Position numbers and translations under genes: made by a program
Origin: Ylistrum balloti
Lineage: Eukaryota
DNA: 64,000 nucleotides
NCBI RefSeq assembly: GCF_031769215.1
Contig: NW_026781965.1
Coordinates: 3,658,001-3,722,000, forward strand
Direction: 5' to 3'
Shown: piece after piece, positions 23,783 through 61,449 of the stretch
Layout: every line of letters starts with the position of its first letter
Numbering within the stretch: the stretch's first letter is position 1
The notes under the pieces: model-generated
The model's database searches: none
What the model was told of the DNA's origin: nothing
The model's input: the letters and a program-made list of their open reading frames with translations, nothing else

Positions 23783-25108
23783 ATGCACGGAAAGCTCACT
23801 TGTTTTGTATACTTATTTTGGCTTGCTGGAAGAAATGTGACTTCTGTTATGCTTCCAGAAACACAAAAGCTGTACAAACAGTTGTTTCGGAACTACACCG
23901 TGGAGCTCCGGCCAGTTCTTAACCAGAGTAAACCCGTGGAGGTCCGAGTTTCAATGGGAATAATGTCAATCAACGACTTGGATGAACTGTCAGGTACAAT
24001 TACTCTGACTGTGATATTCCATTCAATATGGAAAGAAGAAAGATTTACGTGGAATCCTGAACTATTGGGCGGTCTGAAATCACTAACCCTTCCTCAGGAA
24101 TCCGTGTGGTTGCCGGAAATGGTTCTCACCACTGCAGCAGACGACACAGTGCATATCTCTACAAAGGGCAATTTCAAGGTGCGCGTGGATTTCACGGGTC
24201 TTATGAACTGGTGGAGGATTGGAATCATCAAGTCAGCATGTGTAGCGGATGTGACGTATTTTCCGTACGATTTCCAAAAGTGCCATGTAGTTCTGTCGCC
24301 TTTTGGGTACCAGACGGAAGAGATAAGCATAGTTGCCATAAGGGATACGATTTCGTTTGATCACTTCTCTAACAATGGTCAATGGAAAGTAAAATCGTCG
24401 TCGGTCAAGGTCAATTCCCTACCCATGACGAAGGACAAGATAGAAGACAGTGTAGTATTTGCTAACTTTACGCTAGAAATTGAGAGAAAGTCGTTGTACT
24501 TTGTCGTGTCCGTGATAATCCCAATAGCATTACTTGCTCTACTCAACCCATGTGTGTTCGCTCTCCCTATAGAATCTGGCGAACGGGTATCCTTCGCTAT
24601 AACCGTATTGTTGTCATTCGCGGTATTTGAGTCTATGGTCAGCGATTACATGCCTCAGGGGTCGGACCCAATGTCGTTGCTCTCTCTATTCTTGGTAATA
24701 ACACTGTTGAACAGCACACTTATCACAATAACAACCATCCTGCTTCATGCTATGTACCACAAGGATGATACCGACGCCGTACCGGAATGGTTGGTTCAAA
24801 TGCATCTTTTTATTCGACAATGTACACCATCACGAAAAATAAATCCAGCGTACCCGAGACCTGAAGACAAGGAAACCATCTCCGAAATGTCCGACTCGGA
24901 CAGAAAGTCACAATACGGGCACACGGAAAAATCAGAATCCAAAATGGCTACCAGTATCAACGACGTGGACACGGGTATGAGGTCAGCCTCCGAAGATTCG
25001 GCTATAAATTGGAGACAAATAACGGAAACGTTTGATCGTATATTCCTTGTAGTGTTTCTCTTGTTCAATTTTCTTTTTTGTTTAGTGTTTTTCTTGTATA
25101 TATCTTAG
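23783..25108 (+). CDS. nAChR-like Cys-loop ligand-gated ion channel subunit G1 (441 aa, intronless CDS, non-alpha)
   Basis: The track ORF opens on TTG at 23744. First ATG is 23783 (MHGKLTCFVYLFWLAG, signal-like). Cys loop CVADVTYFPYDFQKC, four TM segments, M2 GERVSFAITVLLSFAVF, no vicinal Cys. Confidence 0.95.
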   Translation: MHGKLTCFVYLFWLAGRNVTSVMLPETQKLYKQLFRNYTVELRPVLNQSKPVEVRVSMGIMSINDLDELSGTITLTVIFHSIWKEERFTWNPELLGGLKSLTLPQESVWLPEMVLTTAADDTVHISTKGNFKVRVDFTGLMNWWRIGIIKSACVADVTYFPYDFQKCHVVLSPFGYQTEEISIVAIRDTISFDHFSNNGQWKVKSSSVKVNSLPMTKDKIEDSVVFANFTLEIERKSLYFVVSVIIPIALLALLNPCVFALPIESGERVSFAITVLLSFAVFESMVSDYMPQGSDPMSLLSLFLVITLLNSTLITITTILLHAMYHKDDTDAVPEWLVQMHLFIRQCTPSRKINPAYPRPEDKETISEMSDSDRKSQYGHTEKSESKMATSINDVDTGMRSASEDSAINWRQITETFDRIFLVVFLLFNFLFCLVFFLYIS

Positions 25109-25329
25109 AAATACAAATTGTTCAATATATCAGACGACGATGAAATTTCAAAGATGTGAAACAAAGCCTTTTGTGGAACATATTTCAGATTTCGGATAGT
25201 GCCCTTGTTGTGTGTGAAGACTAACGTTTTCGTGAACGTCGTAGTTTTATACAAAGCACACCATCTGTAGACGTTTGTAAACTGTCATTAAAAAAGTAAG
25301 TGTATGCGAACGAAATGAAATGTACTATC

Positions 25330-26077
25330 AGTGACTTTGATGTTTTTGCTACTGGATGTTTTGTAAATATCCCGTTAAAGACAAACGATCTTATAGGAGA
25401 CAGGTGTACATTCATCAACTCAAAGACATAATGATTAGCAGTGTTCCTTGGAATAATGGTCTCCATAACCTAAGATATATTAGTGAAGTGTGTAAATACT
25501 TTAATGATAAATTCTGTGAGGCTGTCAAGAAATGTTTCCCACCCAATGAAATGTTAGTGCGATAAGGTGACAAACCCTGGAGGATTGGAATTGATATTAA
25601 ACACGGAGAGAGGCTTTAAAAAAGACGGTGTTAATTACAAAATCCTTTAATTACTTTCAAATTCCCGTCTTATTATCAATCATATTTAATCATTTTTGTA
25701 TATATCATGATTGTTAGAGAATTACCCATGTTATGTCTGTATTAAAACATAGAGATGCAAGTACTTCCTCAGGTTTTATTTTTAAACTGTGGGCTATTGA
25801 CCACGTGATTTAAAAGCACGTGCATACTTCTTTTGTTGAGAATGGATTTATTAATAAATATCAGACAGTGTTTTTATCGAATCATTCTACTGTTTATCTT
25901 ATTGAAGTTCACCATTCAATAATGACTGTGGGAAAATATGAGCTTAATATTGTAACATTCTGTGATTTCTCAAATGCATTTTATCTTGCGTGGCATAAAA
26001 GTCTTCTCCACAAACTGGAGAATGACGTCATTACAAACACGGAATGTCTTACCACGTCATATCGTATGATTTGTTGA
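25330..26077 (+). mobile_element. Degenerate non-LTR retrotransposon (LINE) ORF2 / RT fragment
   Basis: Translates to LINE-type motifs VR*GDKPW, YQTVFLSNHSTVYLIEVHH and FCDFSNAFYLAWHKSLLHKLE (cf. DFSKAFDxVWHxGLLxKL). Broken by stops and frameshifts. Confidence 0.75.
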
Positions 26078-27861
26078 TTGTGTCCATTTGACACTAGTAC
26101 GTCGAAGTTAAATTGGCATTCATTGAAAGAAAAATCTGGGTAAAATGGAGACACTTGTTGGAGACGTCCTGTTATTTTAGTTTATTAAATAGAAACAATT
26201 TCAGTATTCGACAAGTTTTTCTTGGTCAAAGCAGCCGACGTTTTTGAAAATGTTCATTTTTCTATCCATTTTCCTTCATTTATTTCTTTTCCTCCACCAC
26301 CAGTTCACGAGGACCTGTACCGCCAGACGTCGTGTTTTCTTTTTAGGTATTACTACACAGAGGTAGGTCAACTTTGTTTTGAAAAGAATAATATATATGT
26401 AAATTTAGCCACACTACATATATATATACTGTAAATAATAACGAAATCGTGACATATGCTATTTGATAACAATTTCTTTTCTGAGGTATACAGTTGTTTT
26501 GACATTAAACCGTCAGATCGTTTAACCACAGGTGATTAAAGGTACACACATATAGTATAAAAATAGATGTATCCTTACTGTCTCGTTCATCACACGGTTA
26601 CCTCGCCTTATCCGTGTGTCACAGAAGTGGAACTATGGTTTTAAATTGTTAACAACATACGACCTCTAGCTCTTGACGTAATAAAGGGCAAATATTTGCG
26701 GGTAAATTAAGGATATCGTGGTGTTTTGCGTGCCATAATGAGGACAAAATGACAAAATTAATTGTTAGGGGACCGCTTAAATGACAGAGATGTGTCGTCA
26801 GAAGAATCACTTAATTGATTTTTTTAGTCGTTTTATGAACATCAACTGAAATTAGAAACATCGTTTTTACAGCATAGACCTATAACGTACAACTAAACAA
26901 GAAAACCGTGTTCTACTCTGTATTAATCCATACAAAATTTCTTCTAGGAGATTCGATTCACTTCAGGTTTTGTGGATTTATTTTAACGTGAATTCTAACA
27001 CCACCTCAAAACATGGATTTTATGTTGATTGTACTTGATTGATCTCTATAATTAAGATATTATCTTCACAAAATCATGCTTAAATCATAACACAAATATA
27101 TTTTTCGCTGCCCCATGGTCTGGAATTTGTCCAATTTGACAACGGATTGGTGTAGTTTACGCCGACCCTGAGTTTGATGATTACATGTATTCTAAATCAA
27201 AATGCGTCATTAGTAACTTACTGGTTTGATGTTTTTAAATGTCACGTTCAGATTCAAGATTTAAGTTCAAATCACAATGGTCATGTGGAGATAGTATCTA
27301 ACGGTTGGGCACGGCAAATTCAGAGTCCAGATATGTCATTGTTTCCACGGTACAAAACCATTAACAATAACCGAGGTTAAACAAACTTTCCGGATTTGGG
27401 TCCAACATTTGTTTTGAATTCTGATCCCAATTAAAGTCAGTTATCTTGGCATCTAGGGCGACACGTAGAGGTAGCCCTAAACCATGTTTATAACGTTAAT
27501 TGTACTTAGTGGCGCAGTAGGTCAGTGGTTGTTTCCAGAATATAAGATAAGTGTCTTCAGTATATGAGATACACTATGTGTAAATAACCAAAAAGGGCGT
27601 TTTCAAATATGTACAAAAGACCGAAATGATTTGAACTCAGATATTAATTCATGCACATTTACGTCAGAACTGGTATTAGGCGAGGTGAAATAGTTTATAC
27701 ATACGGCCAATCTGTCTTTGATGTTGATGATAGACATTTTTCACTGCACATCTTATCGTCCATATCTGTAGTATTCTAGTCAAAATCGTGACCCAACTTC
27801 AAGTTCTTTATTACATAAAGTCGACTGACTCATCAGATACAGGAAAGTAACAACATAATAC

Positions 27862-29219
27862 ATAACAATATACAAACACATGACTACAGACACAATATAT
27901 ATATAACAATATACAAACACATGACTACAGACACAATATATATATAACAATATACAAACACATTATTACAGACACAATATATATATATAGCAATATACAA
28001 ACACATGACTACAGACACAATATATATATATATATAACAATATACAAACACATTATTACTGACACAATATATATATATAACAATATACAAACACATTATT
28101 ACAGACACAATACTTATATATAACAATATACAAACACATTATTACAGACACAATACTTATATATAACAATATACAAACACATTATTACAGACACAATATA
28201 TATATATAACAATATACAAACACATGACTACAGACACAATATATATATAACAATATACAAACACATGACTACAGACACAATATATATATAACAATATACA
28301 AACACATGACTACAGACACAATATATATATATAACAATATACAAACACATTATTACAGACACAATATATATATATAACAATATACAAACACATTATTACA
28401 GACACAATATATATATATAACAATATACAAACACATGACACAATATATATATAACAATATACAGACACAATATATATATATAACAATATACAAACACATT
28501 ACAGACACAATATATATATATAACAATATACAAACACATGACTACAGACACAATATATATATATATAACACATGACTACAGACACAATATATATATATAT
28601 ACAAACACATTATTACAGACACAATATATATATATAACAATATACAAACACATTATTACAGACACAATATATATATATAACAATATACAAACACATTATT
28701 ACAGACACAATATATATATATATAACAATATACAAACACATTATTACAGACACAATACATATATAACAATATACAAACACATTACTGACACAATATATAT
28801 ATAACAATATACAAACACATGACTACAGACACAATATATATATATAACAATATAAAAACACATTATTACAGACACAATATATATATATACAATATACAAA
28901 CACATTACTGACACATATATATATATAACAATATACAAACACATTACTACAGACACAATATATATATAACAATATACAAACACATTATTACAGACACAAT
29001 ATATATATATATATAACAATATACAAACACATTATTACAGACACATATATATATATATAACAATATACAACACATATGACTACAGACACATATATATATA
29101 TATATAACAATATACAAACACATTATTACAGACACAATATATATATAACAATATACAAACACATTATTACAGACACAATATATATATATATAACAATATA
29201 CAAACACATTATTACAGAC

Positions 29220-29250
<31 letters not shown>

Positions 29251-30684: not shown

Positions 30685-30715
<31 letters not shown>

Positions 30716-32539: not shown

Positions 32540-33350
32540 ATCAACGGGAAAGAGGAAACCGATGAGAGGCATGACGTCAAATGACAAATGACTAGAGGCA
32601 TGACGTGAAAAGACAAGAGAAAGACAAAAAGGCGATGACGACAGACATGACGTCAAAAGGAAAGACAAAGGGTCGTGACGAAAGAGAGAAAGAGAGACTA
32701 GTAAGCGCTTGCCCCCAAGAGGGAATATACTCAGTAAAGGCAATGGCTAGAAGTGTGACGTCAAGAGAAAATGTGATGACTAGAGGCGCGACATGAAGAA
32801 AGAGATAGGCGATGAGTAAAGATGTGACGTCAAGGGAAAGGCGGTAACTAGAGGGGCGACATGAAGAAAGAGATAGGCGATGAGTAAAGATGTGACGTCA
32901 AGGGAAAGGCGGTAACTAGAGGCGCGACATGAAGAAAGAGATAGGCGACGAATAAAGATGTGACGTCAAGCGAAAGGCGATGACTAGAGGCGCGGCATCA
33001 AAGAGAAAGAAAGGCGACGAATAAAGATGTGACGTCAAGCAAAAGGCGATGACTAGAGGCGTGACATCAAAAAAAAAAAAAAAAAAAAAGGCGATGAGTA
33101 AAGATGTGACGTCAAGCGAAAGGCGATGACTAGAGGCACGACATCAAAGAAAAAGAAAGGCAACGAATATAGATGTGGCGTCGAAAGAAAGGCGATGACT
33201 AGAGGCGTATCACCAGGAGAAATATTTGAATTACATTACTTTCGTGTACATAAAAAATTTGCTATAAGAAACTTGGCGTCCATAGACAGAGAAGAGTGAT
33301 GACAAGTGATGTGACGCCAAGAAAAAGAGAAAGGCGATGATTATAGGCGT
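32540..33350. repeat. ~68-bp purine-rich tandem repeat carrying TGACGTCA motifs
   Basis: TGACGTCA at 32572, 32648, 32756, 32825, 32893, 32961, 33030 and 33107. Spacing in the core is 68-69 bp. Confidence 0.9.
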
Positions 33351-35242
33351 GCCGCTAACGGAAAAAGGAAAAAAGTAGAAACAAGTACGTTTACAACGAG
33401 AAAAGATAACATGAATATTTTGTCTAATATCAACGAAACCTTCTTCCATGTCACCGGTTTATTCTTCCGGTCCTGATCTTTACTGTTTATTTTTTTCTTG
33501 TTAGGCTGGACAGCTTTCTGTATTTGACAAAGACCGGGCTTTTCTATTGTGATGTCTGGTATCACTACAGAGTTGTGCACATGTTTGTTTCGGTGCTGAC
33601 TTTCAGAACGAAACTTGATACTAGATGTCTGCCATTGTTTATCATTAGTTAAACCATTGACCTCGTTTTTTAATTTATTACCGTTGCTTGGTTTGCTCCA
33701 GTGGCCATTCAGTTGACTGGACCTACCCCCGTCACTGGCGTTTGATATTTTCCTTACACTTTCATCTAGCTTGAAAGAGTCGTTTTCCAATTTTACTTTA
33801 CACATATCTATAGGATTGTCCTCACAAAGAAGTACAGGGGAAACCTTCCTTCCGCGTTTTACATTTGAGTTGTTCGAAGAGACTAAGGAACAGCTTGTCT
33901 GCCTCTCTATAACCACAGATTGACTCTCAATAATTTGTTCTGAATCCTCCTTTGTGATTTCCGATTTGAGGGAAAGTTGGCGGTTAATTTCCGGATACAT
34001 ATACCTTATCTCTGAAGCATTGCTGTCTGGACAAGAAGGACTCCTTTGGGGGTCAATGACTACGTTAGTACTAGACACCGACATCTTGTCTGGGGGAACC
34101 ACCGTTATATGTCTTATATGTTGAGTTTGTTTCTTTCTCTTGGTTTTGTTCACAAAACATGATGTAAGCTTTTGTAAAAATATTGGAATGTTTTTGTTAT
34201 CAGACCTGAAATAGAGAAATATTGAGAAAATAGCGGAGATAGAGACTAGTACACTGTATATCATCTGCCACATGAAGAAGTACCCGAGATAAGTCATTCT
34301 GTCCGAGGCCTTCGGTAGAAACGATATGGAATGGATGAAGTAAAACGATAAGGTTATGAATCCTATGGAGACTAATTGTCCGCGACCTTCCTCAGCAGGA
34401 AGCATAAAAGAACACGTGATCAGTATCGTTATCAGTAGGACAGGAAGGAGCAGGTTGATGACGAAATACACAGGTTTACGTGACATCGTTATCTCAAAAT
34501 GTACATTTGAACTTTGACTCGAAAACGTACCGTATACATTTGACTGGTCGACGTTCCATTCTGTGTTTGTGTTTAGGGAACTGATGTCAATATTTTTTCC
34601 GCTTTCCATGATACCAAGTTTTACTTCACTTGGACTGTATCCCACAATACCAAACGAAACATTACATATTTGGACGTCAAAGGGAAAATATTGAACGTTT
34701 GTCCTGCATAAAGATTGTATCGTTATCCTTGGCTTCCAAATGATGTCACCGCTATTGTTAATCAGAATAATATCACTGCCGGTATGTATCCCACTTATAT
34801 CATCAAATGGGTTAGCGACAACGACCGGTGGTACCCACACGTCTGAAGCACGCATGCGAACAGTCTTTGTGTCCTTAAAAATATCTGAATAGTTTTTCCA
34901 AGATAAAAGTTGGTCCGTCCATCTGACTTCTAAATTACCGACGGTATGAAGGACGCCTAATACACAGTCCAGTTTTGCGATGGAGCGAAGAGTTAAACTT
35001 GCTCGTACGTCCACTCTATCTTCTAAATGTCTGACCGGACGAATATATTTACTATAGTTCAAAAAAATATCAGAATCAAATAGCATTTGCATGGTTTGGC
35101 TTGTCACTGTTGTGAGATTTCCGACAGAAATGTATGTACTGAGGACAAAACATGTCAACAGCATTGGCGAGTACAGCACAGAAGGCATCGGGGGCCCGTG
35201 TAGTTCTCCTCCAAAACTCAGCATGCTATTATGGCAAAACAT
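33341..35242 (-). CDS. Highly divergent nAChR-like Cys-loop subunit G2 (up to 633 aa, intronless CDS, long M3-M4 loop)
   Basis: Cys loop CRTNVQYFPFDVQIC, WVPP loop A, RKPVYF pre-M1, four TM segments. The true start may be the ATG at 35188 or 35164, ahead of the hydrophobic signal segment. Confidence 0.93.
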   Translation of the reverse strand: MFCHNSMLSFGGELHGPPMPSVLYSPMLLTCFVLSTYISVGNLTTVTSQTMQMLFDSDIFLNYSKYIRPVRHLEDRVDVRASLTLRSIAKLDCVLGVLHTVGNLEVRWTDQLLSWKNYSDIFKDTKTVRMRASDVWVPPVVVANPFDDISGIHTGSDIILINNSGDIIWKPRITIQSLCRTNVQYFPFDVQICNVSFGIVGYSPSEVKLGIMESGKNIDISSLNTNTEWNVDQSNVYGTFSSQSSNVHFEITMSRKPVYFVINLLLPVLLITILITCSFMLPAEEGRGQLVSIGFITLSFYFIHSISFLPKASDRMTYLGYFFMWQMIYSVLVSISAIFSIFLYFRSDNKNIPIFLQKLTSCFVNKTKRKKQTQHIRHITVVPPDKMSVSSTNVVIDPQRSPSCPDSNASEIRYMYPEINRQLSLKSEITKEDSEQIIESQSVVIERQTSCSLVSSNNSNVKRGRKVSPVLLCEDNPIDMCKVKLENDSFKLDESVRKISNASDGGRSSQLNGHWSKPSNGNKLKNEVNGLTNDKQWQTSSIKFRSESQHRNKHVHNSVVIPDITIEKPGLCQIQKAVQPNKKKINSKDQDRKNKPVTWKKVSLILDKIFMLSFLVVNVLVSTFFLFPLAARL

Positions 35243-38970: not shown

Positions 38971-39708
38971 CTAACCCTCTAGTCCGGCTACAACAAGCGG
39001 GTACATGAAGAAAACCGTGATACCCAGCGACAGGAAGAAAAAGAATATAAAAGAGAATCCGTCCAAAGCCCCGCCCACCATCCTCCATGTAATTCCTCTA
39101 ATGTCTCTATCATCTACTGGCGCCTGGATACTGTCAACTTCGGCGTCGCTGTTGTCATCCTCATCGTCGTTATCGATAATGTCTGTCACTGCGTTCCTAC
39201 TCGCCTTCTTTTTGCTGCACCATTTTTTACATTTTCGGCATGTCATGAATGCAACGAGATGACGTACTCCCTCTGGGGGTGTGGCCTCCTCGTCCTGATG
39301 GTAAACTCTTAATATCAGAATCGTTGCTATTGTAATGAGGGAACTGACGAATAACATCAGAGTGAGGAAGTAACAGAGCAGCGACATTGGTTCAGAGGCT
39401 TTGGGCAAGTTTTCTGCCACCATCGTCAGAAACACAGCGAAAGTCAAGAACGCCGTAATGGCGTAACCGACACGTTCGCCACAGTCAGCCGGAAGTAGAA
39501 ATACCAAACCATTGAGGAGTCCAATAATAAGGATTGGAATGATCATGTTGACTAGGAAATAACCCGGCTTCCGGGAGAGATTTAGAGTGAAGACGACATA
39601 CGACACGTCCGCGATAACGGTACTCATCACAGAAGTCGTATCCAAGCTCCATTCAACATTCTCCATGTAAAGGGACATGTCAATTTCGTTTGATGAATTC
39701 AGGACAAT
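38971..39708 (-). CDS. nAChR-like subunit G3, coding exon 2 (loop C, M1-M4)
   Basis: Acceptor ttttttgtttAG|ATT at 39709/39708 is in frame with track ORF 38971..39678. M2 GERVGYAITAFLTFAVF. Confidence 0.93.
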   Translation of the reverse strand: MVLNSSNEIDMSLYMENVEWSLDTTSVMSTVIADVSYVVFTLNLSRKPGYFLVNMIIPILIIGLLNGLVFLLPADCGERVGYAITAFLTFAVFLTMVAENLPKASEPMSLLCYFLTLMLFVSSLITIATILILRVYHQDEEATPPEGVRHLVAFMTCRKCKKWCSKKKASRNAVTDIIDNDDEDDNSDAEVDSIQAPVDDRDIRGITWRMVGGALDGFSFIFFFFLSLGITVFFMYPLVVAGLEG

Positions 39709-40131: not shown

Positions 40132-40674
40132 CTGATCCTTCACGTAGCCCAGCGCCGCAAATGTGACATTGCATGACTGTTTGTCGAAAGGATAGAGTGT
40201 GACGTCAACGCCACATGACGTTCGTGCGACTAAGCCGACATTCCAGATAGCATTACCCTCATAGTCGATCCGAATTTTGTATGCTGAGTCCCCAAGTTCC
40301 GTTAGGGAGTCGACAGAGTTGGTGAGAGTGACCGGGGGTTTCCAGAATGTTTCCTGCGGTAACAACAGGTTCTCCATTGGATTGTCATCTACTAGGTTCC
40401 ACGTTAGAAGTTCATTCCTCCACCGTATCACAGCTAATCCCACTATAGCCAAGTTTCCGTTCAACTCATCAAAGTCCGTCACTCCGACCAATGTAAACTC
40501 AATGTCAACGTCTAAATGTTCAATTTGGTATATCTTTGGAAATATTTTGCTATTGTAGCTCCTAAACGGTTCATTGTCCAAGAATTCTTTGAAGTTTGTA
40601 CTTGTAGCAGAGAAAACACTTTCAATATTCCATAAACTAACACAAAGAACGACCACAATCCAGTGACTCGCCAT
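40132..40674 (-). CDS. nAChR-like subunit G3, coding exon 1 (joined protein 426 aa)
   Basis: ATG 40674 (MASHWIVVVLCVSLW, signal peptide). Cys loop CGVDVTLYPFDKQSC. Confidence 0.93.
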
Positions 40675-44323: not shown

Positions 44324-45115
44324 TTATTCTTCATCGGAGGAAGAGGAGGTCGCAGCTACGGCGAGAGGAATCAAGAACACACATGAAATGACGACGGTCC
44401 CGAAAACGAACAACGAGAAGAAAAATCCGTCCAGTGTGCCCCCGACCACCCGCCATGTTATACCTTTTATATCAGCATTGTTTGGCTTGGCTTTTTTCAC
44501 CTCCGTCTTCCGTTTCCCTTCATCGTCTGAATCTTCCTCCTCTTCCTCCTCCGACGACGATTCTTCTTCCTCTACTTCCTGTCCCGGTTTGGGTTCTTCT
44601 ATAGCCTCCAGCTTTTGTCCACACCACTTCTTACACTTTCTGCAGGTAATGAATGCCACCACGTGTTTTAGCCACATGGGTACTGGGCTGTCATCATCCT
44701 GGTGATACACTCGTAGTGTCATGATAGTAATCACGGTCGATAAGGCGCTCATAATCAACATCAACGTCAGGAAGAAGCATAGCAGAGACATTGGTTCAGA
44801 AGATTTGGGAAGGTTATCAGACACCATGGTCAAAAACACAGCAAATGTGAGGAAAGCGGTGATAGCATACCCAACGCGTTCACCGGAATCAGCCGGGAGA
44901 AGGAATACCAGACCGTTAAGCATACCGAGGATAAGAATGGGAATGATCATGTTAACCAGAAAGTAGCCCGGTTTCCGAGCCAGATTAAGGGAGTAATCGA
45001 GGTAGGAGGCCGAGGCGGAGGAGAGCGCTTCCACGGTGGTGCTAGTCAAAGTCCATTCCACGTTCGGCATGAAAAGATCGGTGTTCATACCTGTACTGGT
45101 AGTGTTTAGTCGAAC
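44324..45115 (-). CDS. nAChR-like subunit G4, coding exon 2
   Basis: Acceptor ctgtttcAG|GTT at 45116/45115 is in frame with ORF 44324..45088. M1-M4 present. Confidence 0.93.
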   Translation of the reverse strand, partial: VRLNTTSTGMNTDLFMPNVEWTLTSTTVEALSSASASYLDYSLNLARKPGYFLVNMIIPILILGMLNGLVFLLPADSGERVGYAITAFLTFAVFLTMVSDNLPKSSEPMSLLCFFLTLMLIMSALSTVITIMTLRVYHQDDDSPVPMWLKHVVAFITCRKCKKWCGQKLEAIEEPKPGQEVEEEESSSEEEEEEDSDDEGKRKTEVKKAKPNNADIKGITWRVVGGTLDGFFFSLFVFGTVVISCVFLIPLAVAATSSSSDEE

Positions 45116-46156: not shown

Positions 46157-46705
46157 CTGTGTGTCTGTGTATCCCCAAGGTGTAAAGGAAATCTTGCAAA
46201 CTTGTTTGTCGAAGGGGTAGTAAGACACGTCTACGGAACAGGCCGACTTGGACACGACGCCAATCTGCCATTCACAAACGCCATCTTTATTAATCCGTAT
46301 TTTATAGGAATTGTCGCCCATTTCAGTGAGAGATTCGACAGAGTTTGAAAGAACCAGAGATGGCCTCCAGAAATTATTCTGTCCCAAAATCACCTCCTGC
46401 ATCGCGTTGATGGAGCTATTCCACATCAGAAGTTCATTCGTCCATGTCAGCACCGTATATCCCACAAGATCTAGGTATCCGTTCAGTTCATTCAACTGTG
46501 TAATTGCTACAAGATAAAACTGCATGTCTACTTCCACTTTATCTGTTTGTGCATTCCGCGGAAAAATCTTCAAGTTGTATGTACTAAAGGGAGGACTGTC
46601 TATCCATGATCGATAATCTGTGGCTGTCTGGGCGTTTAGTAGGTCTACAGTAAACAGAATAGTCACCCAAAACATCATACACTGTATCAGTCGCAACGAA
46701 CCCAT
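46157..46705 (-). CDS. nAChR-like subunit G4, coding exon 1 (joined protein 446 aa)
   Basis: The track ORF opens on TTG at 46735. First ATG is 46705 (MGSLRLIQCMMFWV). Cys loop CSVDVSYYPFDKQVC, loop B TPWGY. Confidence 0.93.
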
Positions 46706-48446: not shown

Positions 48447-49700
48447 TTAATTAGAAACTTGTTGCACTTTGATGTAAAAGACAAGTGACACACATAAATA
48501 GATTATCCAATAAGTCATAAAGAAGATCTTGTCCAACGCTTTCCCGATCATTTCCCCATCATATTCATTTACAGACTTGTCACCAGTCCGGTCTTCACTA
48601 CTCGCGGTGCCGGATTCTCTATTGGTCACAGACATTTTTCCTATTTCGACATCTTTTTTAGGACCGCTGAAATACCCAAACCGACTACAATTTGTTATGT
48701 CCACCAGTGTTTTTAAGTACTTTGGTACTGGTAAATTTCTTTTTTCGAAATGAAACCTTAAATTGAACACAGTGGCAAAAGTTATTGTAGAACTCAGAAG
48801 TAACATAATCAGCATATAGTAGGAAAGAAGAGGCATCGGGAACGAGGCTTGAGGTAAGCTTGCACTCATCAAGCTGAGGAAGACGGCAAATGTGAGGAAG
48901 GCAGCAATAGCATAGCCTACTCGTTCACCGGTATTCGATGGTAACAGAAACACAAGTGTGTTCAGAATCGCCAACAGAAAAATAGGCAGTGCCATGTTTA
49001 TCATGAAAAATGTTGGTTTTCGAGCAAGTGAAATTGTAAATAACAAGAAGGCTTGTCTTCTTACGACCCTCATGCTGACTTCCGTTTCCGTTACATTCCA
49101 CTCTTCACTGCCGACAAATTCATCTGTCAGAAAGCCCGATTCGTGCATGTTGAAATCTATTTCGGTATTGATGTAACTCATTGGAGTTAAAATCAAGGTG
49201 CATTTCTGAACGTCAAATGGGTAGTTTGTAGCATCAACGGCGCACCCCGTCCTACTCACCATCCCGAATGCCCATGTTACGTCTCCAGAAGTCATGTCAA
49301 TGCGAACATTATGGAAACCCTGTCCCAAGGTCGATGCCATTGAATCCACGGAATTGAATATGGAAATTGTTGGAGTCCAAATAAATTCCGATGGAAACGA
49401 GAGTTGTTGAAATATATGATGAGATTTGTTGAATGTTGCGGTGACAAGTTCGTCGTTCCAGTGCATTTGAATGTTACCAACCATGTTTAGATGTCCAGTT
49501 ATCTCGTCAAAGTGGGTAATGGCGGCTATGCTGAAGGACAGCGCTATCTCTACTGGGCGCGACTGGTTATGACGGGGGAATACATTATTACTATACGGAC
49601 ATAAAGAACAAAACGTTCGGTTTACAAAGTCCAGGACGGTGTCCGTCGTTTGTCCGATACACGGGACTGTACACAGGTATATCAATAGAAGCATATACAT
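48447..49700 (-). CDS. nAChR-like subunit G5 (417 aa, intronless CDS)
   Basis: Signal peptide, Cys loop CAVDATNYPFDVQKC, M2 GERVGYAIAAFLTFAVF, four TM segments. Confidence 0.95.
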   Translation of the reverse strand: MYMLLLIYLCTVPCIGQTTDTVLDFVNRTFCSLCPYSNNVFPRHNQSRPVEIALSFSIAAITHFDEITGHLNMVGNIQMHWNDELVTATFNKSHHIFQQLSFPSEFIWTPTISIFNSVDSMASTLGQGFHNVRIDMTSGDVTWAFGMVSRTGCAVDATNYPFDVQKCTLILTPMSYINTEIDFNMHESGFLTDEFVGSEEWNVTETEVSMRVVRRQAFLLFTISLARKPTFFMINMALPIFLLAILNTLVFLLPSNTGERVGYAIAAFLTFAVFLSLMSASLPQASFPMPLLSYYMLIMLLLSSTITFATVFNLRFHFEKRNLPVPKYLKTLVDITNCSRFGYFSGPKKDVEIGKMSVTNRESGTASSEDRTGDKSVNEYDGEMIGKALDKIFFMTYWIIYLCVSLVFYIKVQQVSN

Positions 49701-53895: not shown

Positions 53896-53948
53896 TATTC
53901 TCGAGTACAGATCCTGTAGTCAAAGAATTTTCCGGAAGTACAATGAAA

Positions 53949-55439
53949 TTATGCTCTGGAGAAGAGAGGAACAAGAAACACACTTGAAAGCGCTATACTT
54001 CCGATAGTAAAGACAACAAAGAAAAACTTGTCTAAAGTTTGCGCCACGATTTTCCACGTAACACCATATCTAATTTCCGGTTGTTGATCTTCCTCTTCCT
54101 CGTCACTTTCGTCATCTACGACGACCGCCTGTGTTGGTTGTGACGGCGGTTTCTTAACCTCGTCTAAAGGGTCCAATGCCATCCCTAATCGACTCGGACC
54201 GGCGACCCCTTCCATCCCCAATCGACTCGGAGCGGCGCTGGGGCCCAGGCTCGAGGGCGGACGACTTTTCTCTTCCGGCCCCGCAGCCACTGGCTTTGGT
54301 TTCGGTGGCGGAGCTTTAGGTTCGGGTTTTTCCGGATTTCTGTATTTTTCTTTACATATACGGAAAGTCATTGTAGCCACAAGGGCAGCAACGTAAAATG
54401 GAACAGTAGAATCTTCGTCCTTGTCATGTATCCGGAGAGTAAAAATTGTAACAAGAGTCGACATGCTGCTCATGGCCAACATAGAGGAGAGGTAATAACT
54501 CAACATGGCTAATGGTGCAGAAGTCTTTGGTAAATTCTCTGCCAGAATCGTTAAAAATACGGCAAATGTTAAAAACACATTCACAGCAAAGCCTATTCTT
54601 TCTCCAGCATCGGCAGGTAACACGAAAACGAGACTGTTGAGCAGCCCGACTAGAACTAGAGGACTAATCATGTTCACAATGAAAAACACTGGCCTCCTTT
54701 TCAAATTCAGTACATACCTTCTAAACGGTTTGTTAGATGAGTTATATGTACTCACTGTTGACCCCTGCAAATCCCACTCCTCGTTTTCATCGTAGTACTC
54801 AATGTCCAGTTCGGTGGCCGAATTGTCAAACATGACTTCCTCTGCGTTGTAGTCCCACATGGTAAGAACAAGTTCACAAGCCTGACTATCGAATGGGTAG
54901 TAGGTAGCATCGACCGAACATCCGGTGGCAGTGGTCACTCCGGCTCGCCAATAGTTCTTGGCAGCGGCCAGAATGGTCTTAACGTGATAATTCTTGTCAT
55001 AGATTGGTTTCAGAGCATTCACAGAGTTAAAGATGGTGATGGTTGGGTACCATACGTCTGACTGCAAGGAGTCCATCTCATACGGTACATGGTGACCTGG
55101 GATGTACCTCTGGGTTAGGTACTCGTCCTTCCAGATCACAGTTAGCTTGGCCATTAAGTTCATCACACCTGATACCTCGTCCAGATCGGTAATTTTGTAC
55201 AACTGAAAAGTGACGTCAACGAATATTGTCTCGTTCTGCATCAAACGAGGGAAAACTCGCCTATCGTAGATTGTGGAGTCAAACAGATCCGCTAACATAG
55301 TGGCAAAGTCCGAGGCTGTTGGAACGGGAATGGTCTGACACAGTGAACAGTTGGACTCGATGAGGAACGACCCCCCAGACACACCGGAGATGGCCGTTCC
55401 CACCAGCAGCAGCAGCAGCCTTAAGTACATACTGCTCAT
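53949..55439 (-). CDS. nAChR-like subunit G6 (496 aa, intronless CDS, Pro-rich M3-M4 loop)
   Basis: Signal MSSMYLRLLLLLVGTAISGVSG, Cys loop CSVDATYYPFDSQAC, M2 GERIGFAVNVFLTFAVF. Confidence 0.95.
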   Translation of the reverse strand: MSSMYLRLLLLLVGTAISGVSGGSFLIESNCSLCQTIPVPTASDFATMLADLFDSTIYDRRVFPRLMQNETIFVDVTFQLYKITDLDEVSGVMNLMAKLTVIWKDEYLTQRYIPGHHVPYEMDSLQSDVWYPTITIFNSVNALKPIYDKNYHVKTILAAAKNYWRAGVTTATGCSVDATYYPFDSQACELVLTMWDYNAEEVMFDNSATELDIEYYDENEEWDLQGSTVSTYNSSNKPFRRYVLNLKRRPVFFIVNMISPLVLVGLLNSLVFVLPADAGERIGFAVNVFLTFAVFLTILAENLPKTSAPLAMLSYYLSSMLAMSSMSTLVTIFTLRIHDKDEDSTVPFYVAALVATMTFRICKEKYRNPEKPEPKAPPPKPKPVAAGPEEKSRPPSSLGPSAAPSRLGMEGVAGPSRLGMALDPLDEVKKPPSQPTQAVVVDDESDEEEEDQQPEIRYGVTWKIVAQTLDKFFFVVFTIGSIALSSVFLVPLFSRA

Positions 55440-55957: not shown

Positions 55958-56345
55958 CGAGTATATGGGAGGGTTAATACATGAGGGATAGAGAGTATAA
56001 CAAGTGTCTGAGAGAGGGTTAATACTTTAGGGGTAGACAGTATAACACGTGTCTGAGAGAGGGTTAATACATATGGGGTGGACAGTATAACAAGTGTCTG
56101 AGAGAGGGTTAATACATATGGGGTGGACAGTATAACACGTGTCTGAGAGAGGGTTAATACATATGGGGTGGACACTATAACACGTGTCTGAGAGAGGGTT
56201 AATACATGTGGGGTGGACAGTATAACACGTGTCTGAGAGAGGGTTAATACATATGGGGTGGACAGTATAACACGTGTCTGAGAGAGGGTTAATACATATG
56301 AGGTGGACAGTATAACAAGTGTCTGAGAGAGGGTTAATACATGTG
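55958..56345. repeat. 45-bp minisatellite, ~8-9 copies
   Basis: Unit gtataacacgtgtctgagagagggttaatacatatggggtggaca. Confidence 0.94.
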
Positions 56346-57327: not shown

Positions 57328-59261
57328 ACCAGGACTGGTCTATATTGCCCTGGGATGAGGGTTTATACTGTACCAGGACTGACCTATATTGTCCTGGGGT
57401 AAAGGTTTATACTGTACCAGGACTGGTCTATATTGTCCTGGAATGAGGGTTTATACTGTACCAGGACTGACCTATATTGTCCTGGGGTGAAGGTTTATAC
57501 TGTACCAGCACTGACCTATATATTCCCGGGATGAAGGTTTATACTGTACCAGGACCGGTCTATATTGGCCTAAGGTGAATGTTTACACTGTACCAAGACT
57601 GACCTATATTGTCCCGGGGTGAAGGTTTATACTGTACCAGGACAGGTCTATATTGTCCTGGGGTGAAGGTTTATACTGTACCAGGACTGGCCTATATTGT
57701 CCTGAGGTGAAGGTTTATACTGTACCAGGACTGGTCTATATTGTCCTGGTGTAAAGGTTTATACTGTACCAGGACTGACCTATATTGTCCTTGGATGAAG
57801 GTTTATACTGTACAAGGACTGACCTATATTGTCTTGGGGTGAAGATTTATACTGTACCAGCACTGACCTATATTGTCTTGGGGTGAAGGTTTATTCTGTA
57901 CCAGGACAGGTCTATATTGGCCTACGGTGAATGTTTATTATGTACCAGGACTGGTCTATATTGTCCCGGGGTGAAGGTTTATACTGTACCAGGACTGACC
58001 TATATTGTCCTGGGGTAAAGGTTTATACTGTACCAGGACTGGTCTATATTGTCCTGGGGTGAAGATTTATACTGTACCAGGACTGGTCTATATTGTCCTG
58101 AGGTGAAGGTTTATACTGTACCAGGACAGGTCTATATTGGCCTAAGGTGAATGTTTATTATGTACCAGGACTGGTCTATATTGTCCTGAGGTGAAGGTTT
58201 ATACTGTACAAGGACTGACCTATATTGTCCTGGGGTAAAGGTTTATACTGTACAAGGACTGACAAGGACTGACCTATATTGTCCCTACAAGGACTGACCT
58301 ATATTAGGTAAAGGTTTATACTGTACCAGGACTGGTCTATATTGTCCTGGGGTGAAGGTTTATACTGTACCAGCACTGACTAATATTGTCTTGGGGTGAA
58401 GGTTTATACTGTACCAGGACAGGTCTATATTGCCCTGGGATGAGGGTTTATACTGTACCAGCACTGACCTATATTGTCTTGGGGTGAAGGTTTATACTGT
58501 ACCAGGTTTATACTGTACCAGGACTGGTCTATATTGTCCTGAGGTGAACGTTTATACTGTACCAGGACTGGTCTATATTGTCCTTGGATGAAGGTTTATA
58601 CTGTACAAGGACTGACCTATATTGTCCTTGGATGAAGGTTTATACTGTACAAGGACTGACCTATATTGTCCTGGGGTGAAGATTTATACTGTACCAGCAC
58701 TGACCTATACTGTCTTGGGGTGAAGATTTATACTGTACCAGCACTGACCTATATTGTCTTGGGGTGAAGATTTATACTGTACCAGCACTGACCTATATTG
58801 TCTTGGGGTGAAGGTTTATACTGTACCAGGACTGGTCTATATTGCCCTGAGTTGAAGGCTTATACTGTACCAGGACTGGCCTATATTGTCCTGGAATGAA
58901 GGTTTATACTGTACCAGGACTGGCCTATATTGTCCTGGGGTGAAGGTTTATACTGTACCAGGACAGGTCTATATTGTCCTGGTGTAAAGGTTTATACTGT
59001 ACCAGGACTGGCCTATATTGTCCTGGTGTAAAGGTTTATACTGTACCAGGACTGACCTATATTGTCTTGGGGTGAAGGTTTATACTGTACCAGGACTGGT
59101 CTATATTGCCCTGAGTTGAAGGCTTATACTGTACCAGGACTGGCCTATATTGTCCTGGAATGAAGGTTTATACCACACCATCACTGGTCAATATTGCCCT
59201 GAGTTGAAGGCTTATACTGTACCAGGACTGACCTATATTGTCCTGGAATGAAGGTTTATAC
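57328..59261. repeat. 44-bp minisatellite with internal hairpin, ~44 copies
   Basis: Unit accaggactggtctatattgtcctggggtgaaggtttatactgt, stem CCAGGAC/GTCCTGG. Confidence 0.96.
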
Positions 59262-60096
59262 CACACCATCACTGGTCAATGTTTCAAGGATTTCAAAAAT
59301 CCAACTTTGTTTCCCTATTGTGTCCTGCTTTCAAGCCTTCAAAGGCTAAGTCAAATCGTGTATACAAAATTAAACTCCATTCACCTTAAGTATAGAAAAA
59401 AAACTTTCATCCAAACAAGGATTTTTATAGATTTTCTGACATTGAGTTCTCGCCAAAGGATGCTCTAGACCATTTGGTAAAAATCTCCTCAGTCGTACGG
59501 TGTTTACTAAGTTGAGTGATTGTTTTGTGTTCATATCAGTTGCCTTACATAATCTCCCTTTACCTTATTATCATGTAGAATCACATCATACTTCATCAGT
59601 GTTCCCTGTGTGTGTCGCTTCCATCACTACGTGAAGTTCTGTACAGGTTACAATATTTCTTAGAATCTTTATTTAAAATTACCAATTTAATAAAACAATT
59701 ACTCGTACAACAAAAATACGATAACAGTAATTTATTGATTTGATTATACAACGTAAATCTGTCTACTTCTGCTGTGGACATCAGAGTGTAAACATGAGGC
59801 GGTACAAGGGTTCTATATACATACCAATATGTTTGTCTAAGGTTAGGAAGCTACTCCTAAACGTAGGAGGTAATTAATCGTGTACGCCGACGAATATTAC
59901 TATTATTCAGTAAACTTAATAAACACAACAAAGTTAACACGTTGTATAACAGAATATTTTGATGTCCGCCTTAAAAACGATGACTTCCTTTAACATGGCT
60001 CTTTAATAACCAATCAGCATCATTGCCAGGAGTAAAGAAAGTCGTTACATATAAATTTCCACGGAAGACATAACTGTTCTCTCATGGTCCTTGATT

Positions 60097-61449
60097 TTAC
60101 ATTGTGGCTGCTAACGGTACGAGGAAGAAGAAAGTGATGAGAGCATTCCCAGCCACAAATACGAGGAAGAATAAAAAGTCCAGAGTGGCCGAAATAAGCT
60201 TCCAATCTACACCGTATTTACCTTTCACGATTTCTTTTTCTTCATTTTCCTCGTCATCTACAGCCTCGTCGTCGTCGTCCGGTAACGGCGCCTTTTCGTT
60301 GTCACCAAGGTCGGCCCCAGGGTCAACCATATCTAATGGTGCATTTTTAGAATCTAGAGGATCTGGCGTTTTTATAGCAAATATCTCCATTTCGTCGTCG
60401 TCGTCATCTTCGTCCTTACATATTTTGCAATTTAAGACGGCGACGATGGTGGCCAGTCTGTCCGGTATTTTCTCTTCCTCCTCTGTGTGAAAAACCCGGA
60501 GCGTTGTGATTGTGAAAAGTGCAGTTCCAGCGCTAATACAGGTCATAATCATGAGATACACACATAGGATGGACAACGGCTCCGACGTCCGCGGCAAGTT
60601 CTCAGAAGTCAAAGTCAAATACACTGCAAAGGACATGAAAGCTGTGATAGAATAAGAGATTCTTTCTCCTGTCGCTGGCGGAAGTAGAAAGACAATAGCG
60701 TTAAGGAGACTCAGAATAAGGATTGGAAACACCAAATTCGCGAGAAAGAAGAGAGAACGTCTGGCCAGAGTCAGGGTAAATGTGGCATAATTGATGCTGT
60801 TGACGTCTTCTGTCTCCAGGACAGTTTTCTCAATACTCCATTCTTCGTTATCTCGGTAATTATCCAAATTTACTTCGTTAGACGAGATAGCAAAACGCAC
60901 CTCTGTATTCCTGTATCCCCAATTTGTAAAAGTTACCTTACACTCTTGTTTGTCAAACGGAAAGTTAGAGGCGTCGACATTGCATCCTGTCTTCAGCACG
61001 ATTCCGGGCCACCACTCCATCGCACCAGTAACCTGGTTACAGCGAATCTTGTTGGTTACGTCTCCGACCACTTTAATCTTGGAGACGGAGTTAAATACGG
61101 TGACGGTAGGGACCCATATATTGGAGGAAGAGATGAGAATATCACTGATGTTTCCGTGTATTGCCCAGTTGTACTGGTCTCCTATCAGCTGGTCAGTCCA
61201 TGTTATCTTTAGGATACCGATTAACTCAAGCGTCCCTGCAACCTCGTCGAATTCTTTAATGGACGAAAGATAGAATATCATATCAACGTTTATAACATCA
61301 GCCTGGGTATCCCGCGGGAAAACCTTGCTATTGTAAGCGCCACTTGTGATGGTCGCGGAATAGAAATCCAAAAGCTGTGTGTAATTTGCTCCCAAAGTCC
61401 CGTGAACTATGAGAAACAACAAAGTGACTATCTTGTTCACGGCATCCAT
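60097..61449 (-). CDS. nAChR-like subunit G7 (450 aa, intronless CDS)
   Basis: Signal MDAVNKIVTLLFLIVHGTLG, Cys loop CNVDASNFPFDKQEC, M2 GERISYSITAFMSFAVY. Confidence 0.95.
   Translation of the reverse strand: MDAVNKIVTLLFLIVHGTLGANYTQLLDFYSATITSGAYNSKVFPRDTQADVINVDMIFYLSSIKEFDEVAGTLELIGILKITWTDQLIGDQYNWAIHGNISDILISSSNIWVPTVTVFNSVSKIKVVGDVTNKIRCNQVTGAMEWWPGIVLKTGCNVDASNFPFDKQECKVTFTNWGYRNTEVRFAISSNEVNLDNYRDNEEWSIEKTVLETEDVNSINYATFTLTLARRSLFFLANLVFPILILSLLNAIVFLLPPATGERISYSITAFMSFAVYLTLTSENLPRTSEPLSILCVYLMIMTCISAGTALFTITTLRVFHTEEEEKIPDRLATIVAVLNCKICKDEDDDDDEMEIFAIKTPDPLDSKNAPLDMVDPGADLGDNEKAPLPDDDDEAVDDEENEEKEIVKGKYGVDWKLISATLDFLFFLVFVAGNALITFFFLVPLAATM

What the first reader, a model, noticed from the sequence alone, without database searches (positions are those of the whole stretch)
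23783..61449. Seven-gene array of Cys-loop channels lacking the acetylcholine pocket: candidate chemosensory receptor cluster
Seen: seven intact subunit genes, none with vicinal Cys in loop C. The loop A Tyr position (alpha7 Y93) reads T,A,T,S,F,F,F in G1-G7. The loop B Trp (W149) reads F,V,L,W,M,W,W. The loop D Trp (W55) reads I,N,L,Y,N,K,I. The Cys loop and TM scaffold are intact. Established: these aromatics form the ACh cation-pi box. Cephalopod chemotactile receptors are tandem nAChR-derived channels that lost this box and sense poorly soluble compounds, and expansion of intron-poor nAChR-like genes is reported in bivalves. Inference: this is a diversifying non-cholinergic, possibly chemo- or contact-sensory receptor family with unknown ligands, perhaps assembling combinatorially.
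Basis: partly seen in the sequence, partly recalled or inferred. Interest (0 to 1): 0.85.

Follow-up and report, generated by a model that had tools for sequence, protein, structure and literature searches.

The report
Old scallop cluster of nicotinic-like channels
Seven neighbouring scallop genes encode nicotinic-receptor-like channel subunits that lack the usual acetylcholine pocket. They form an old, conserved cluster of a kind already described in bivalves, not a fast-diversifying sensory family, and their ligand and tissue are still unknown.

Summary
The window contains exactly seven intact Cys-loop (pLGIC) subunit genes. Five are single-exon. G3 and G4 share one phase-0 intron.

The host is a pectinid scallop. 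The nearest relatives I could name are all bivalve proteins, and almost all of them are also non-alpha.

The array is old and stable, not diversifying:
- The G7 and G6 lineages have orthologues in mussels, oysters and ark shells. G1 has one in a pearl oyster.
- Gene order and orientation are the same in Argopecten and match the sampled parts of Pecten.
- Non-synonymous change is far below synonymous change in every gene and domain.
- The six binding-site loops are about as conserved as the rest of the ligand-binding domain.

A G7 structure model is equally distant (20-24% identity) from alpha7, beta2, 5-HT3A, Alpo4 and the cephalopod receptors CRT1 and CRB1. It shows no special kinship with the cephalopod receptors.

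I found no RNA evidence, because the only sequencing run served was DNA. A sensory role is therefore untested.

Tandem intron-poor bivalve nAChR-like arrays with degenerate binding sites and "other ligands" are already published (Jiao 2019; MolluscaGenes 2026). First-stage notes in this scan give the same reading for two other pieces of this genome. This is a new member of a known kind, of modest interest.

The parts
23783..25108 (+). G1, single-exon non-alpha nAChR-like subunit (441 aa). It lies tail-to-tail with G2. Pocket D/A/B = I/T/F. Pore G-E-R with 9' Leu.
   Evidence: Pfam LBD 3.2e-45 and TM 5.6e-17. Alignment to alpha3/alpha1. Orthologues: Argopecten 82%, Pecten 87%, Pinctada 54%, with identical loops A and B. 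The genome's own model (384 aa) starts at an internal Met.
33341..35242 (-). G2, single-exon subunit (633-codon ORF; likely start at 35164). It has a long intracellular loop and a rewritten M2. Pocket N/A/V.
   Evidence: Pfam. M2 reads E-E-G-R-G-Q with a one-residue deletion, and Argopecten keeps the same form. Intact 612-aa orthologous ORF in Argopecten. TM1-3 pN 0.038 against pS 0.68.
40132..40674 (-). G3 exon 1 (signal peptide and most of the ligand-binding domain, ending ..VKDQ).
   Evidence: Donor GT at 40131-40130. Pfam LBD.
38971..39708 (-). G3 exon 2 (end of the ligand-binding domain, M1-M4). The intron is 39709-40131. Pocket L/T/L.
   Evidence: Acceptor AG at 39710-39709, in frame. 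Same intron in Argopecten, where the spliced product equals XP_069123857.1.
46157..46705 (-). G4 exon 1 (ending ..TDTQ).
   Evidence: Donor GT at 46156-46155. Pfam LBD.
44324..45115 (-). G4 exon 2. The intron is 45116-46156 and holds a 56-bp minisatellite. Pocket Y/S/W.
   Evidence: Acceptor AG at 45117-45116, in frame. Minisatellite at 45343-46100. Same intron position in Argopecten G4.
48447..49700 (-). G5, single-exon subunit (417 aa). Pocket N/F/M. It has the fastest-evolving ligand-binding domain after G2.
   Evidence: Pfam. 70% identical to the Argopecten orthologue. The loop-B position is M here, R in Argopecten and Pecten, and W in deeper orthologues.
53949..55439 (-). G6, single-exon subunit (496 aa). 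Pocket K/F/W.
   Evidence: Pfam. 88-90% identical to the Pecten orthologue, with TM1-3 pN 0.000. The orthogroup includes an ark-shell segment (support 100/98).
60097..61449 (-). G7, single-exon subunit (450 aa). Pocket I/F/W. Met at 9' of the pore.
   Evidence: Pfam. The orthogroup includes Mytilus, Saccostrea and Tegillarca (support 97/99). AF2 model pLDDT 85.5. pN 0.092 against pS 0.737 versus a related scallop.

Best explanation
This is an ancient, collinear cluster of seven divergent non-alpha subunit genes of the nicotinic-receptor branch of the Cys-loop channel family, in a pectinid scallop. It arose by stepwise tandem duplication before the pteriomorph bivalve orders separated. Only the G3/G4 split is younger; among the species sampled I saw both copies only in scallops. 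The cluster has been kept in the same order under strong purifying selection.

Six genes keep a nicotinic-type cation pore (-1' Glu; 9' Leu, or Met in G7) and the ligand-to-pore coupling elements. G2 has a remodelled but conserved pore.

None can form either face of the classical acetylcholine site, and loop C is too short in G2-G7 to cap it. My best reading is an inference, not a demonstration. The subunits assemble with each other, homo- or heteromerically, into cation channels opened at a remodelled, lidless interface site by a small molecule other than acetylcholine. The Phe of loop A and Trp of loop B that were probably ancestral in the G3-G7 clade point to a cationic amine or quaternary ammonium. 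Whether that ligand comes from the animal or from the water is open.
For: - Family and anatomy: Pfam LBD plus TM in all seven. The nearest solved proteins are nAChR alpha and beta subunits. Cys loop, pre-M1 Arg and the G-E-R pore are present.
- No canonical site: anchored.
- Age and stability: the seven are 23-52% identical to each other. In the careful ML tree the G7 (97/99), G6 (100/98), G1 (100/100) and G2 (97/93) groups all include other bivalve orders.
- Gene order: Argopecten has G6-G5-G4-G3-G2 with G1 convergent, as here. Pecten has the same order for the parts sampled, upstream gene-G7-G6 and G5-G4. An unnamed bivalve contig has G7-G6-G5. A Tegillarca fused model runs G7-like, G6-like, G4-like. 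In Mytilus, the G7-lineage and G5-lineage genes have accession numbers two apart.
- Selection: pN is 0.06-0.25 against pS 0.59-0.74 over whole genes. TM1-3 pN is 0-0.04. Binding loops are 56-93% identical between scallop genera, against 64-91% for the rest of the ligand-binding domain. One other individual differs in G3 by 3 synonymous changes and 1 conservative change.
- Loop-B Trp and loop-A Phe are the common state across the G5-G7 orthogroups.
Against: - I obtained no transcript, tissue or ligand data.
- Assembly partners are not shown.
- Synonymous sites are saturated, so the dN/dS ratios are only rough.
- The loop-B Trp has been lost in G1, G2, G3 and G5, which argues against one shared cation-pi ligand for all seven.
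- Non-alpha subunits that lack binding residues also exist as accessory subunits of ordinary ACh receptors, and this cannot be excluded.
- G1 and G2 belong to different subfamilies from G3-G7, so the seven need not work together.
Confidence: 0.5

Rival explanations
1. Accessory or structural subunits. The seven proteins occupy non-binding positions in heteropentamers whose acetylcholine sites are formed by alpha-type and complementary subunits encoded elsewhere. They would tune conductance, trafficking or desensitisation, as vertebrate beta1, alpha5 and beta3 do.
For: All seven are non-alpha and lack residues of both binding faces. The pore and gating scaffold are strongly conserved. Old one-to-one orthology and low gene turnover are typical of synaptic receptor subunits. 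In C. gigas only 33 of 132 family members are alpha-type, so many non-alpha genes must have some role (PMC6896357).
Against: An accessory position is usually one per pentamer, which fits poorly with seven or more conserved cluster genes. The binding loops are as conserved as the core, and loop-B Trp and loop-A Phe are kept across orders in G6 and G7. That is unexpected if those surfaces were idle. Only 3 of the 156 nearest relatives carry the vicinal Cys pair.
Confidence: 0.25
2. These are peripheral chemo- or contact-sensory receptors analogous to cephalopod chemotactile receptors, detecting environmental compounds at the mantle edge, tentacles, palps or gill.
For: They show the same broad syndrome as the cephalopod receptors: nAChR-derived, intron-poor, tandem, with the ACh box lost and the pore kept. 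Bivalve nAChR-like genes are most highly expressed in gill, the main water interface (PMC6896357). A 'CR-like' clade reaching into bivalves has been reported (PMC13174522).
Against: G7 is 22-24% identical to CRB1 and CRT1, the same as to alpha7 and 5-HT3A. All the relatives I could name among the nearest database hits, about twenty, are bivalve proteins. There is no lineage-specific burst and no excess pocket divergence, unlike octopus receptors, whose pocket is reported to be under diversifying selection (PMC11526382). I have no expression data. Conservation does not exclude a conserved sensory ligand, so this reading is weakened but not refuted.
Confidence: 0.17
3. Decaying or functionless retrogene copies that only look intact.
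For: Jiao et al. report that more intron-poor than intron-rich bivalve nAChR genes have no or low expression (PMC6896357). I have no RNA evidence. The Pecten G7 orthologue is split into two gene models.
Against: All seven ORFs are intact. pN is far below pS in all seven genes, and in each domain of the six where I measured it. Orthologues are retained across bivalve orders. Even G2's odd pore is conserved.
Confidence: 0.03

Closest known systems
Expanded intron-poor, tandemly arrayed nAChR-like genes of bivalves (Jiao et al. 2019, BMC Genomics, PMC6896357)
   Same: Bivalve host. Intronless or one-intron genes. Tandem arrays of up to 7-12 genes. Most members are non-alpha with unconserved ACh-site residues. 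Arrays are shared between oyster and pearl oyster and built by stepwise duplication. The authors suggest diverse ligands and environmental monitoring.
   Different: Nothing fundamental. This is one such array in a scallop. What is added here is its conserved gene order across Pectinida, Mytilida, Ostreida and Arcida, and measured purifying selection. I could not check whether it is the same array as their Fig. 5.
Cephalopod chemotactile receptors CRT1 and CRB1 (van Giesen 2020; Allard 2023; Kang 2023, as reviewed in PMC11526382; PDB 9e6b, 8eiz)
   Same: nAChR-derived pentameric cation channels. Intron-poor and tandem. The classical ACh-binding residues are lost.
   Different: No special sequence or structural kinship (22-24% identity and Z about 23, against alpha7 at 24% and Z 26.7). 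The cephalopod genes are lineage-specific expansions with a pocket under diversifying selection. These genes are old orthologues under purifying selection. Sensory expression and hydrophobic ligands are known for the cephalopod receptors and unknown here.
Alpo4, the orphan nAChR-like receptor of the annelid Alvinella pompejana (PMC10338036; PDB 8bx5)
   Same: A lophotrochozoan nAChR-like subunit without the vicinal Cys pair. It has Phe in loop A and Trp in loop B, and does not respond to ACh or serotonin. It is similarly distant from G7 (22% identity, Z 23.1).
   Different: Alpo4 keeps the loop-C tyrosines and the loop-D Trp and has a full-length loop C. G2-G7 have none of these.
Vertebrate non-alpha and accessory nAChR subunits (beta1, beta3, alpha5) and the CHRNA5-A3-B4 gene cluster
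   Same: These subunits do not contribute to agonist binding, and clustered genes encode co-assembling partners. This comparison rests on established knowledge and was not tested here. The top PDB sequence hits for G7 are muscle beta subunits.
   Different: The vertebrate clusters include an alpha subunit, and the complementary subunits keep the loop-D Trp. This cluster has neither.

Membership tests
Cys-loop / pentameric ligand-gated ion channel superfamily | Extracellular ligand-binding domain (PF02931) followed by a transmembrane region (PF02932) | tested here: met
   Both domains are above the Pfam cut-off in G1, G2, G5, G6 and G7. In G3 and G4 they are split across the two exons.
Cys-loop / pentameric ligand-gated ion channel superfamily | Cys loop C-x13-C with the FPFD-type motif | tested here: met
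   All seven, and their scallop orthologues, have it. The two Cys and the P and D are invariant in the 64-sequence alignment.
Cys-loop / pentameric ligand-gated ion channel superfamily | Beta-sandwich plus a four-helix (M1-M4) fold | tested here: met
   AF2 model of G7, pLDDT 85.5. Z 23-27 to nAChR, 5-HT3 and GABA-A chains. Modelled for G7 only.
nAChR alpha-type subunit | Vicinal Cys pair at the tip of loop C | tested here: not met
   No CC in loop C of any of the seven.
Canonical acetylcholine-binding interface | Aromatic box: loop A Tyr, loop B Trp and two loop C Tyr on the principal face, and loop D Trp on the complementary face | tested here: not met
   Loop D Trp is absent in all seven. 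Loop A Tyr is absent in all (Phe in G5-G7). Loop B Trp is present only in G4, G6 and G7. No tyrosine aligns with the two loop-C Tyr positions, and the loop is 6 residues shorter in G2-G7. A conserved Tyr or Phe two residues from the second loop-C Tyr position could be its structural equivalent. I could not check this because the model coordinates are not readable.
Cation-selective nicotinic-type pore | -1' Glu (G-E-K/R) and 9' Leu in M2 | tested here: met
   G-E-R and 9' Leu in G1 and G3-G6. G7 has G-E-R with 9' Met. G2 does not meet this feature: its M2 reads E-E-G-R-G-Q with a one-residue deletion.
Bivalve expanded intron-poor tandem nAChR-like genes (Jiao 2019) | Bivalve origin, 0-2 introns, tandem arrangement, nAChR-family domains | tested here: met
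   Pectinid orthologues at 82-89% identity. Five intronless and two one-intron genes. Seven genes within 37.7 kb.
Cephalopod chemotactile receptors (CR) | Placement in the CR clade of the nAChR tree | tested here: inconclusive
   No tool could supply a CR sequence for a tree. Indirectly, G7 is 24% and 22% identical to CRT1 and CRB1, the same as to alpha7 and 5-HT3A. Neither CR is among the 60 best PDB sequence hits for G1 or G7. All named near relatives are bivalve.
Cephalopod chemotactile receptors (CR) | Lineage-specific expansion with diversifying selection in the pocket | tested here: not met
   The orthogroups predate the bivalve orders. pN is far below pS. Binding loops are no more divergent than the rest of the ligand-binding domain.
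Cephalopod chemotactile receptors (CR) | Expression in peripheral sensory epithelium | not testable with these tools
   The single run served (X1) is DNA: one contig spans the G3 intron at flat depth.
Cephalopod chemotactile receptors (CR) | Gating by poorly soluble environmental compounds and not by ACh | not testable with these tools
   This needs electrophysiology.

The most novel reading that the evidence does not exclude
The cluster, together with the eighth gene seen upstream of G7 in Pecten, encodes the subunits of one or a few dedicated non-cholinergic heteromeric channels. These would have been kept as a co-inherited gene set since before mussels, oysters, ark shells and scallops diverged. 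They would be gated at a lidless Phe/Trp site by a water-borne or epithelial small cation, such as a quaternary ammonium or amine cue. That would make it a conserved ionotropic chemosensor, not a fast-evolving one.
Probability: 0.2. Interest if true: 0.65.

Novelty: new member of a known kind. Interest (0 to 1): 0.3.

Why it matters
Bivalves carry 100-200 nicotinic-like genes, and the ligands of the great majority are unknown. This array is a compact and unusually well-conserved example. Because it has orthologues across four bivalve orders, a ligand found for one species would transfer to many, including farmed scallops, oysters and mussels. The conserved gene order also gives a short, rational list of subunit combinations to co-express. 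As a discovery it adds little, because both the phenomenon and the 'other ligands / environmental sensing' idea are already published.

Tried and rejected
- RNA evidence. The first sequencing-run run found the machine busy. The repeat returned one run of unknown kind. Laying it on G3 showed a single 2.9-kb contig crossing the intron at flat depth with SNPs, so it is genomic DNA from another individual and not RNA.
- Logan contigs. Contigs of about 2 kb carrying G6 and G7 orthologues occur in the same runs, with reproducible ends and no tandem repeat at the ends. I considered them as transcripts. However, genomic contigs that break at the flanking minisatellites would look the same, so I do not count them as expression evidence.
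- A search of the literature for those run accessions found nothing.
- A tree including cephalopod CRs. The word-indexed searches returned only bivalve proteins and one anemone protein. The exhaustive search returns no names. The CR papers are not held in the library. I used structure-based identities instead.
- Foldseek against the PDB listed only vertebrate nAChRs in its top 50 and did not discriminate.
- dN/dS ratios. Synonymous sites are saturated (pS 0.58-0.80), so I report pN against pS rather than trusting the ratios.
- The expression table of Jiao et al. covers C. gigas and Pinctada by gene ID only, and could not be mapped to these genes.

Full report
WHAT IS THERE

Six-frame ORF listing and Pfam show seven loci with the neurotransmitter-gated channel ligand-binding and/or transmembrane domains between 23.7 and 61.5 kb. 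A tblastn of the seven proteins against the whole window finds nothing else of the family.

Five genes are single ORFs: G1 on the + strand, and G2, G5, G6 and G7 on the - strand. G3 and G4 each have two exons joined by a GT..AG, phase-0 intron after a Gln codon at the same alignment position. The Argopecten irradians orthologues have the intron at the same place. Splicing the Argopecten G3 gene there reproduces RefSeq XP_069123857.1 letter for letter. All seven spliced CDSs are free of internal stops.

CHECKING THE POCKET CLAIMS

I anchored the numbering with a HMMER alignment of G1 to human alpha3 and muscle alpha1. I then read the same columns in a 163-sequence MAFFT alignment.

- Loop D (alpha7 W55): I, N, L, Y, N, K, I.
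- Loop A (Y93): T, A, T, S, F, F, F.
- Loop B (W149): F, V, L, W, M, W, W.
- No gene has a vicinal Cys pair.

Three qualifications follow.

- Loop C is not only Cys-less. From the conserved Trp to the pre-M1 basic pair it is 28 residues in G2-G7, against 34 in a canonical alpha-type relative (P0049). G1 has 36.
- The Trp of loop B is kept in G4, G6 and G7. Together with Phe in loop A, it is the common state across the deeper orthologues of G5, G6 and G7. The G3-G7 clade therefore probably started with two of the five box aromatics.
- The pore is nicotinic-type (G-E-R, 9' Leu) in G1 and G3-G6. It has Met at 9' in G7. It is rewritten in G2, with a one-residue deletion.

WHOSE GENES, AND WHAT FAMILY

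The best database hits are pectinid: Pecten maximus at 85-88% and Argopecten irradians at 82-88%. The window therefore comes from a scallop.

An exhaustive profile search finds 24,967 cluster representatives at E <= 0.001. I examined 156 single-subunit relatives, drawn from the top hits of that search and from the earlier searches. Only 3 have the vicinal Cys pair. Nearly all lack the loop-D Trp and loop-A Tyr, while most keep the loop-B Trp. Every relative that carries a source name is a bivalve protein, apart from one sea-anemone protein that I used as outgroup. The bivalve genera are Argopecten, Pecten, Pinctada, Saccostrea, Ostrea, Crassostrea, Mytilus, Tegillarca, Mercenaria, Ruditapes, Potamilus and Sinanodonta. 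The nearest solved proteins by sequence are vertebrate nAChR alpha and beta subunits.

AGE AND STABILITY OF THE ARRAY

The seven proteins are 23-52% identical to one another. A careful ML tree (IQ-TREE, LG+C20+F+G4 by PMSF, 45 rows) gives these groupings.

- A G7 orthogroup containing Mytilus, Tegillarca, Saccostrea and scallops (support 97/99).
- A G6 orthogroup including an ark-shell segment (100/98).
- G5 with a gene from an unnamed bivalve contig (92/71).
- G3 and G4 as a duplication older than the split between this scallop and Argopecten, and younger than the split from the ark-shell gene (99/97).
- G2 on a very long stem, sister to another gene of that unnamed contig (97/93).
- G1 with Pinctada (100/100), outside the clade that holds G2-G7.

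Gene order is conserved.

- In Argopecten (CM084268.1) the order is G6, G5, G4, G3, G2 on one strand, then G1 convergent, exactly as here.
- In Pecten maximus the sampled parts run: an upstream eighth gene, G7, G6, and then G5 followed by G4.
- A 48.7-kb contig of an unnamed bivalve carries G7-, G6- and G5-type genes in that order.
- A fused Tegillarca gene model runs G7-like, G6-like, G4-like.
- In four Mytilus species the G7-lineage and G5-lineage genes have accession numbers two apart or share a contig.

This is a stable, old cluster, not a birth-and-death family.

SELECTION

Against the Argopecten, Pecten or related-scallop orthologues, the proportion of non-synonymous differences is 0.06-0.25 over whole genes. 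The synonymous proportion is 0.59-0.74. TM1-3 show 0.00-0.04, including G2's unusual pore. Synonymous sites are saturated, so the ratios are rough, but the direction is unambiguous. G2 and G5 have the fastest ligand-binding domains.

The six binding-site loops are 56-93% identical between scallop genera, against 64-91% for the rest of the ligand-binding domain. The pocket is therefore not a hot spot. A few pocket positions do vary among scallops.

- The loop-B position of G5 is M here and R in Argopecten and Pecten.
- Loop A of G4 is S here and A in Argopecten.
- Loops A and B of G2 also differ between the genera.

One other individual of the species, the DNA run, differs in G3 by three synonymous changes and one Val-to-Ile change.

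RELATION TO CEPHALOPOD RECEPTORS

I could not obtain a CR sequence for a tree. An AlphaFold model of G7 (pLDDT 85.5) was compared with one representative per 40%-identity PDB cluster.

- beta2: Z 27.1, 21% identity.
- alpha7: Z 26.7, 24% identity.
- 5-HT3A: Z 25.4, 23% identity.
- Alpo4: Z 23.1, 22% identity.
- Squid CRB1: Z 22.8, 22% identity.
- Octopus CRT1: Z 22.6, 24% identity.

G7 is equidistant from all of them. The resemblance to CRs is a shared syndrome (nAChR-derived, intron-poor, tandem, box lost), not demonstrated kinship.

EXPRESSION

This part is not resolved. The only run offered holds 63% of the sampled words of a 10-kb genomic stretch. It lays a single contig across the G3 intron at flat depth, so it is DNA. 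Contigs of about 2 kb with G6 and G7 orthologues co-occur in runs SRR26445941 and SRR27895283. They could be transcripts, or genomic contigs that break at minisatellites.

WHAT IS KNOWN ALREADY

Jiao et al. 2019 (PMC6896357) describe the following.

- 99-217 nAChR genes per bivalve, with 138 in the Yesso scallop.
- Mostly intronless or one- to two-intron genes, in tandem arrays of up to 12.
- An array shared by oyster and pearl oyster, built stepwise.
- Only 33 of 132 oyster genes are alpha-type, and only 13 have a complete principal site.
- Highest expression in gill.
- The suggestion of diverse ligands and environmental monitoring.

The MolluscaGenes preprint (PMC13174522) reports divergent clades with substituted binding residues and a CR-like clade reaching bivalves. 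It explicitly proposes ionotropic chemosensation by such genes. A bivalve tentacle transcriptome study did not examine this family (PMC11682238).

First-stage notes in this scan give the same reading for two other pieces of this genome. Two further notes cover G2's pore and the shared G3/G4 intron.

VERDICT

The genes are real, functional non-alpha nAChR-family subunits that cannot make a classical ACh site.

'Diversifying' is contradicted by the evidence. 'Sensory' is untested, and is somewhat less likely for so conserved a cluster than for a lineage-specific one.

My best reading (0.5) is self-assembling cation channels with a non-ACh agonist at a remodelled site. The main rival (0.25) is accessory subunits of ACh receptors.

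This is a new member of a known kind.

Noticed in passing
window 1-1770, 6033-7663, 8410-10989, 17181-17618, 18173-23041, 27850-31571, 32754-33208, 35853-38438, 41449-42978, 45343-46100, 46958-48411, 51055-53009, 53652-53907, 55969-56342, 57328-59261, 62086-63038: Almost every spacer between the receptor genes, the G4 intron and the 23 kb upstream of G1 are filled with long minisatellites. The unit lengths differ from place to place (18-91 bp, up to about 146 copies). Several create long spurious ORFs, for example 35855-36844 and 41696-43114.
   Followed up: partly
window 33341-35242 (G2); L003:14902-16740: G2's rewritten M2 (E-E-G-R-G-Q, one-residue deletion) and roughly 250-residue intracellular loop are conserved in Argopecten. 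TM1-3 pN is 0.038. The ORF sits on a very long tree branch (1.8 changes per site). It is not among the called genes of the Argopecten locus although the ORF there is intact. The 633-codon ORF probably starts at its 27th codon (35164).
   Followed up: partly
L002:5363-6742 (Pecten maximus LR736838.1): An eighth subunit gene (459 aa) lies about 3 kb upstream of the G7 orthologue in Pecten. It groups with C. gigas XP_034312890.1 and Ostrea genes (support 98/97). The window ends 2.5 kb beyond G7, so the array may continue outside it.
   Followed up: partly
L002:10001-11357: The Pecten maximus G7 orthologue is annotated as two genes (284 and 148 aa), with a frame break between about codons 260 and 300. 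This is either an assembly error or a pseudogene in that species.
   Followed up: no
window 60097-61449 (G7), M2: The pore's 9' Leu is Met in G7 and its scallop orthologues, but Leu in the oyster, mussel and ark-shell orthologues.
   Followed up: partly
window 23783-23953 (G1, 5' end): The genome's own protein model for G1 (384 aa) and the Argopecten and Pecten models start at an internal Met. They lack the signal peptide and the first strands. The full ORF from 23783 aligns with the Pinctada orthologue's N-terminus.
   Followed up: yes
window 48447-49700 (G5), loop B: The loop-B Trp position is Met here, Arg in Argopecten and Pecten, and Trp in the deeper orthologues. This is the one binding-site position that clearly drifts within scallops.
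   Followed up: partly
window 17768-17906: A run of N (assembly gap or masked stretch).
   Followed up: no
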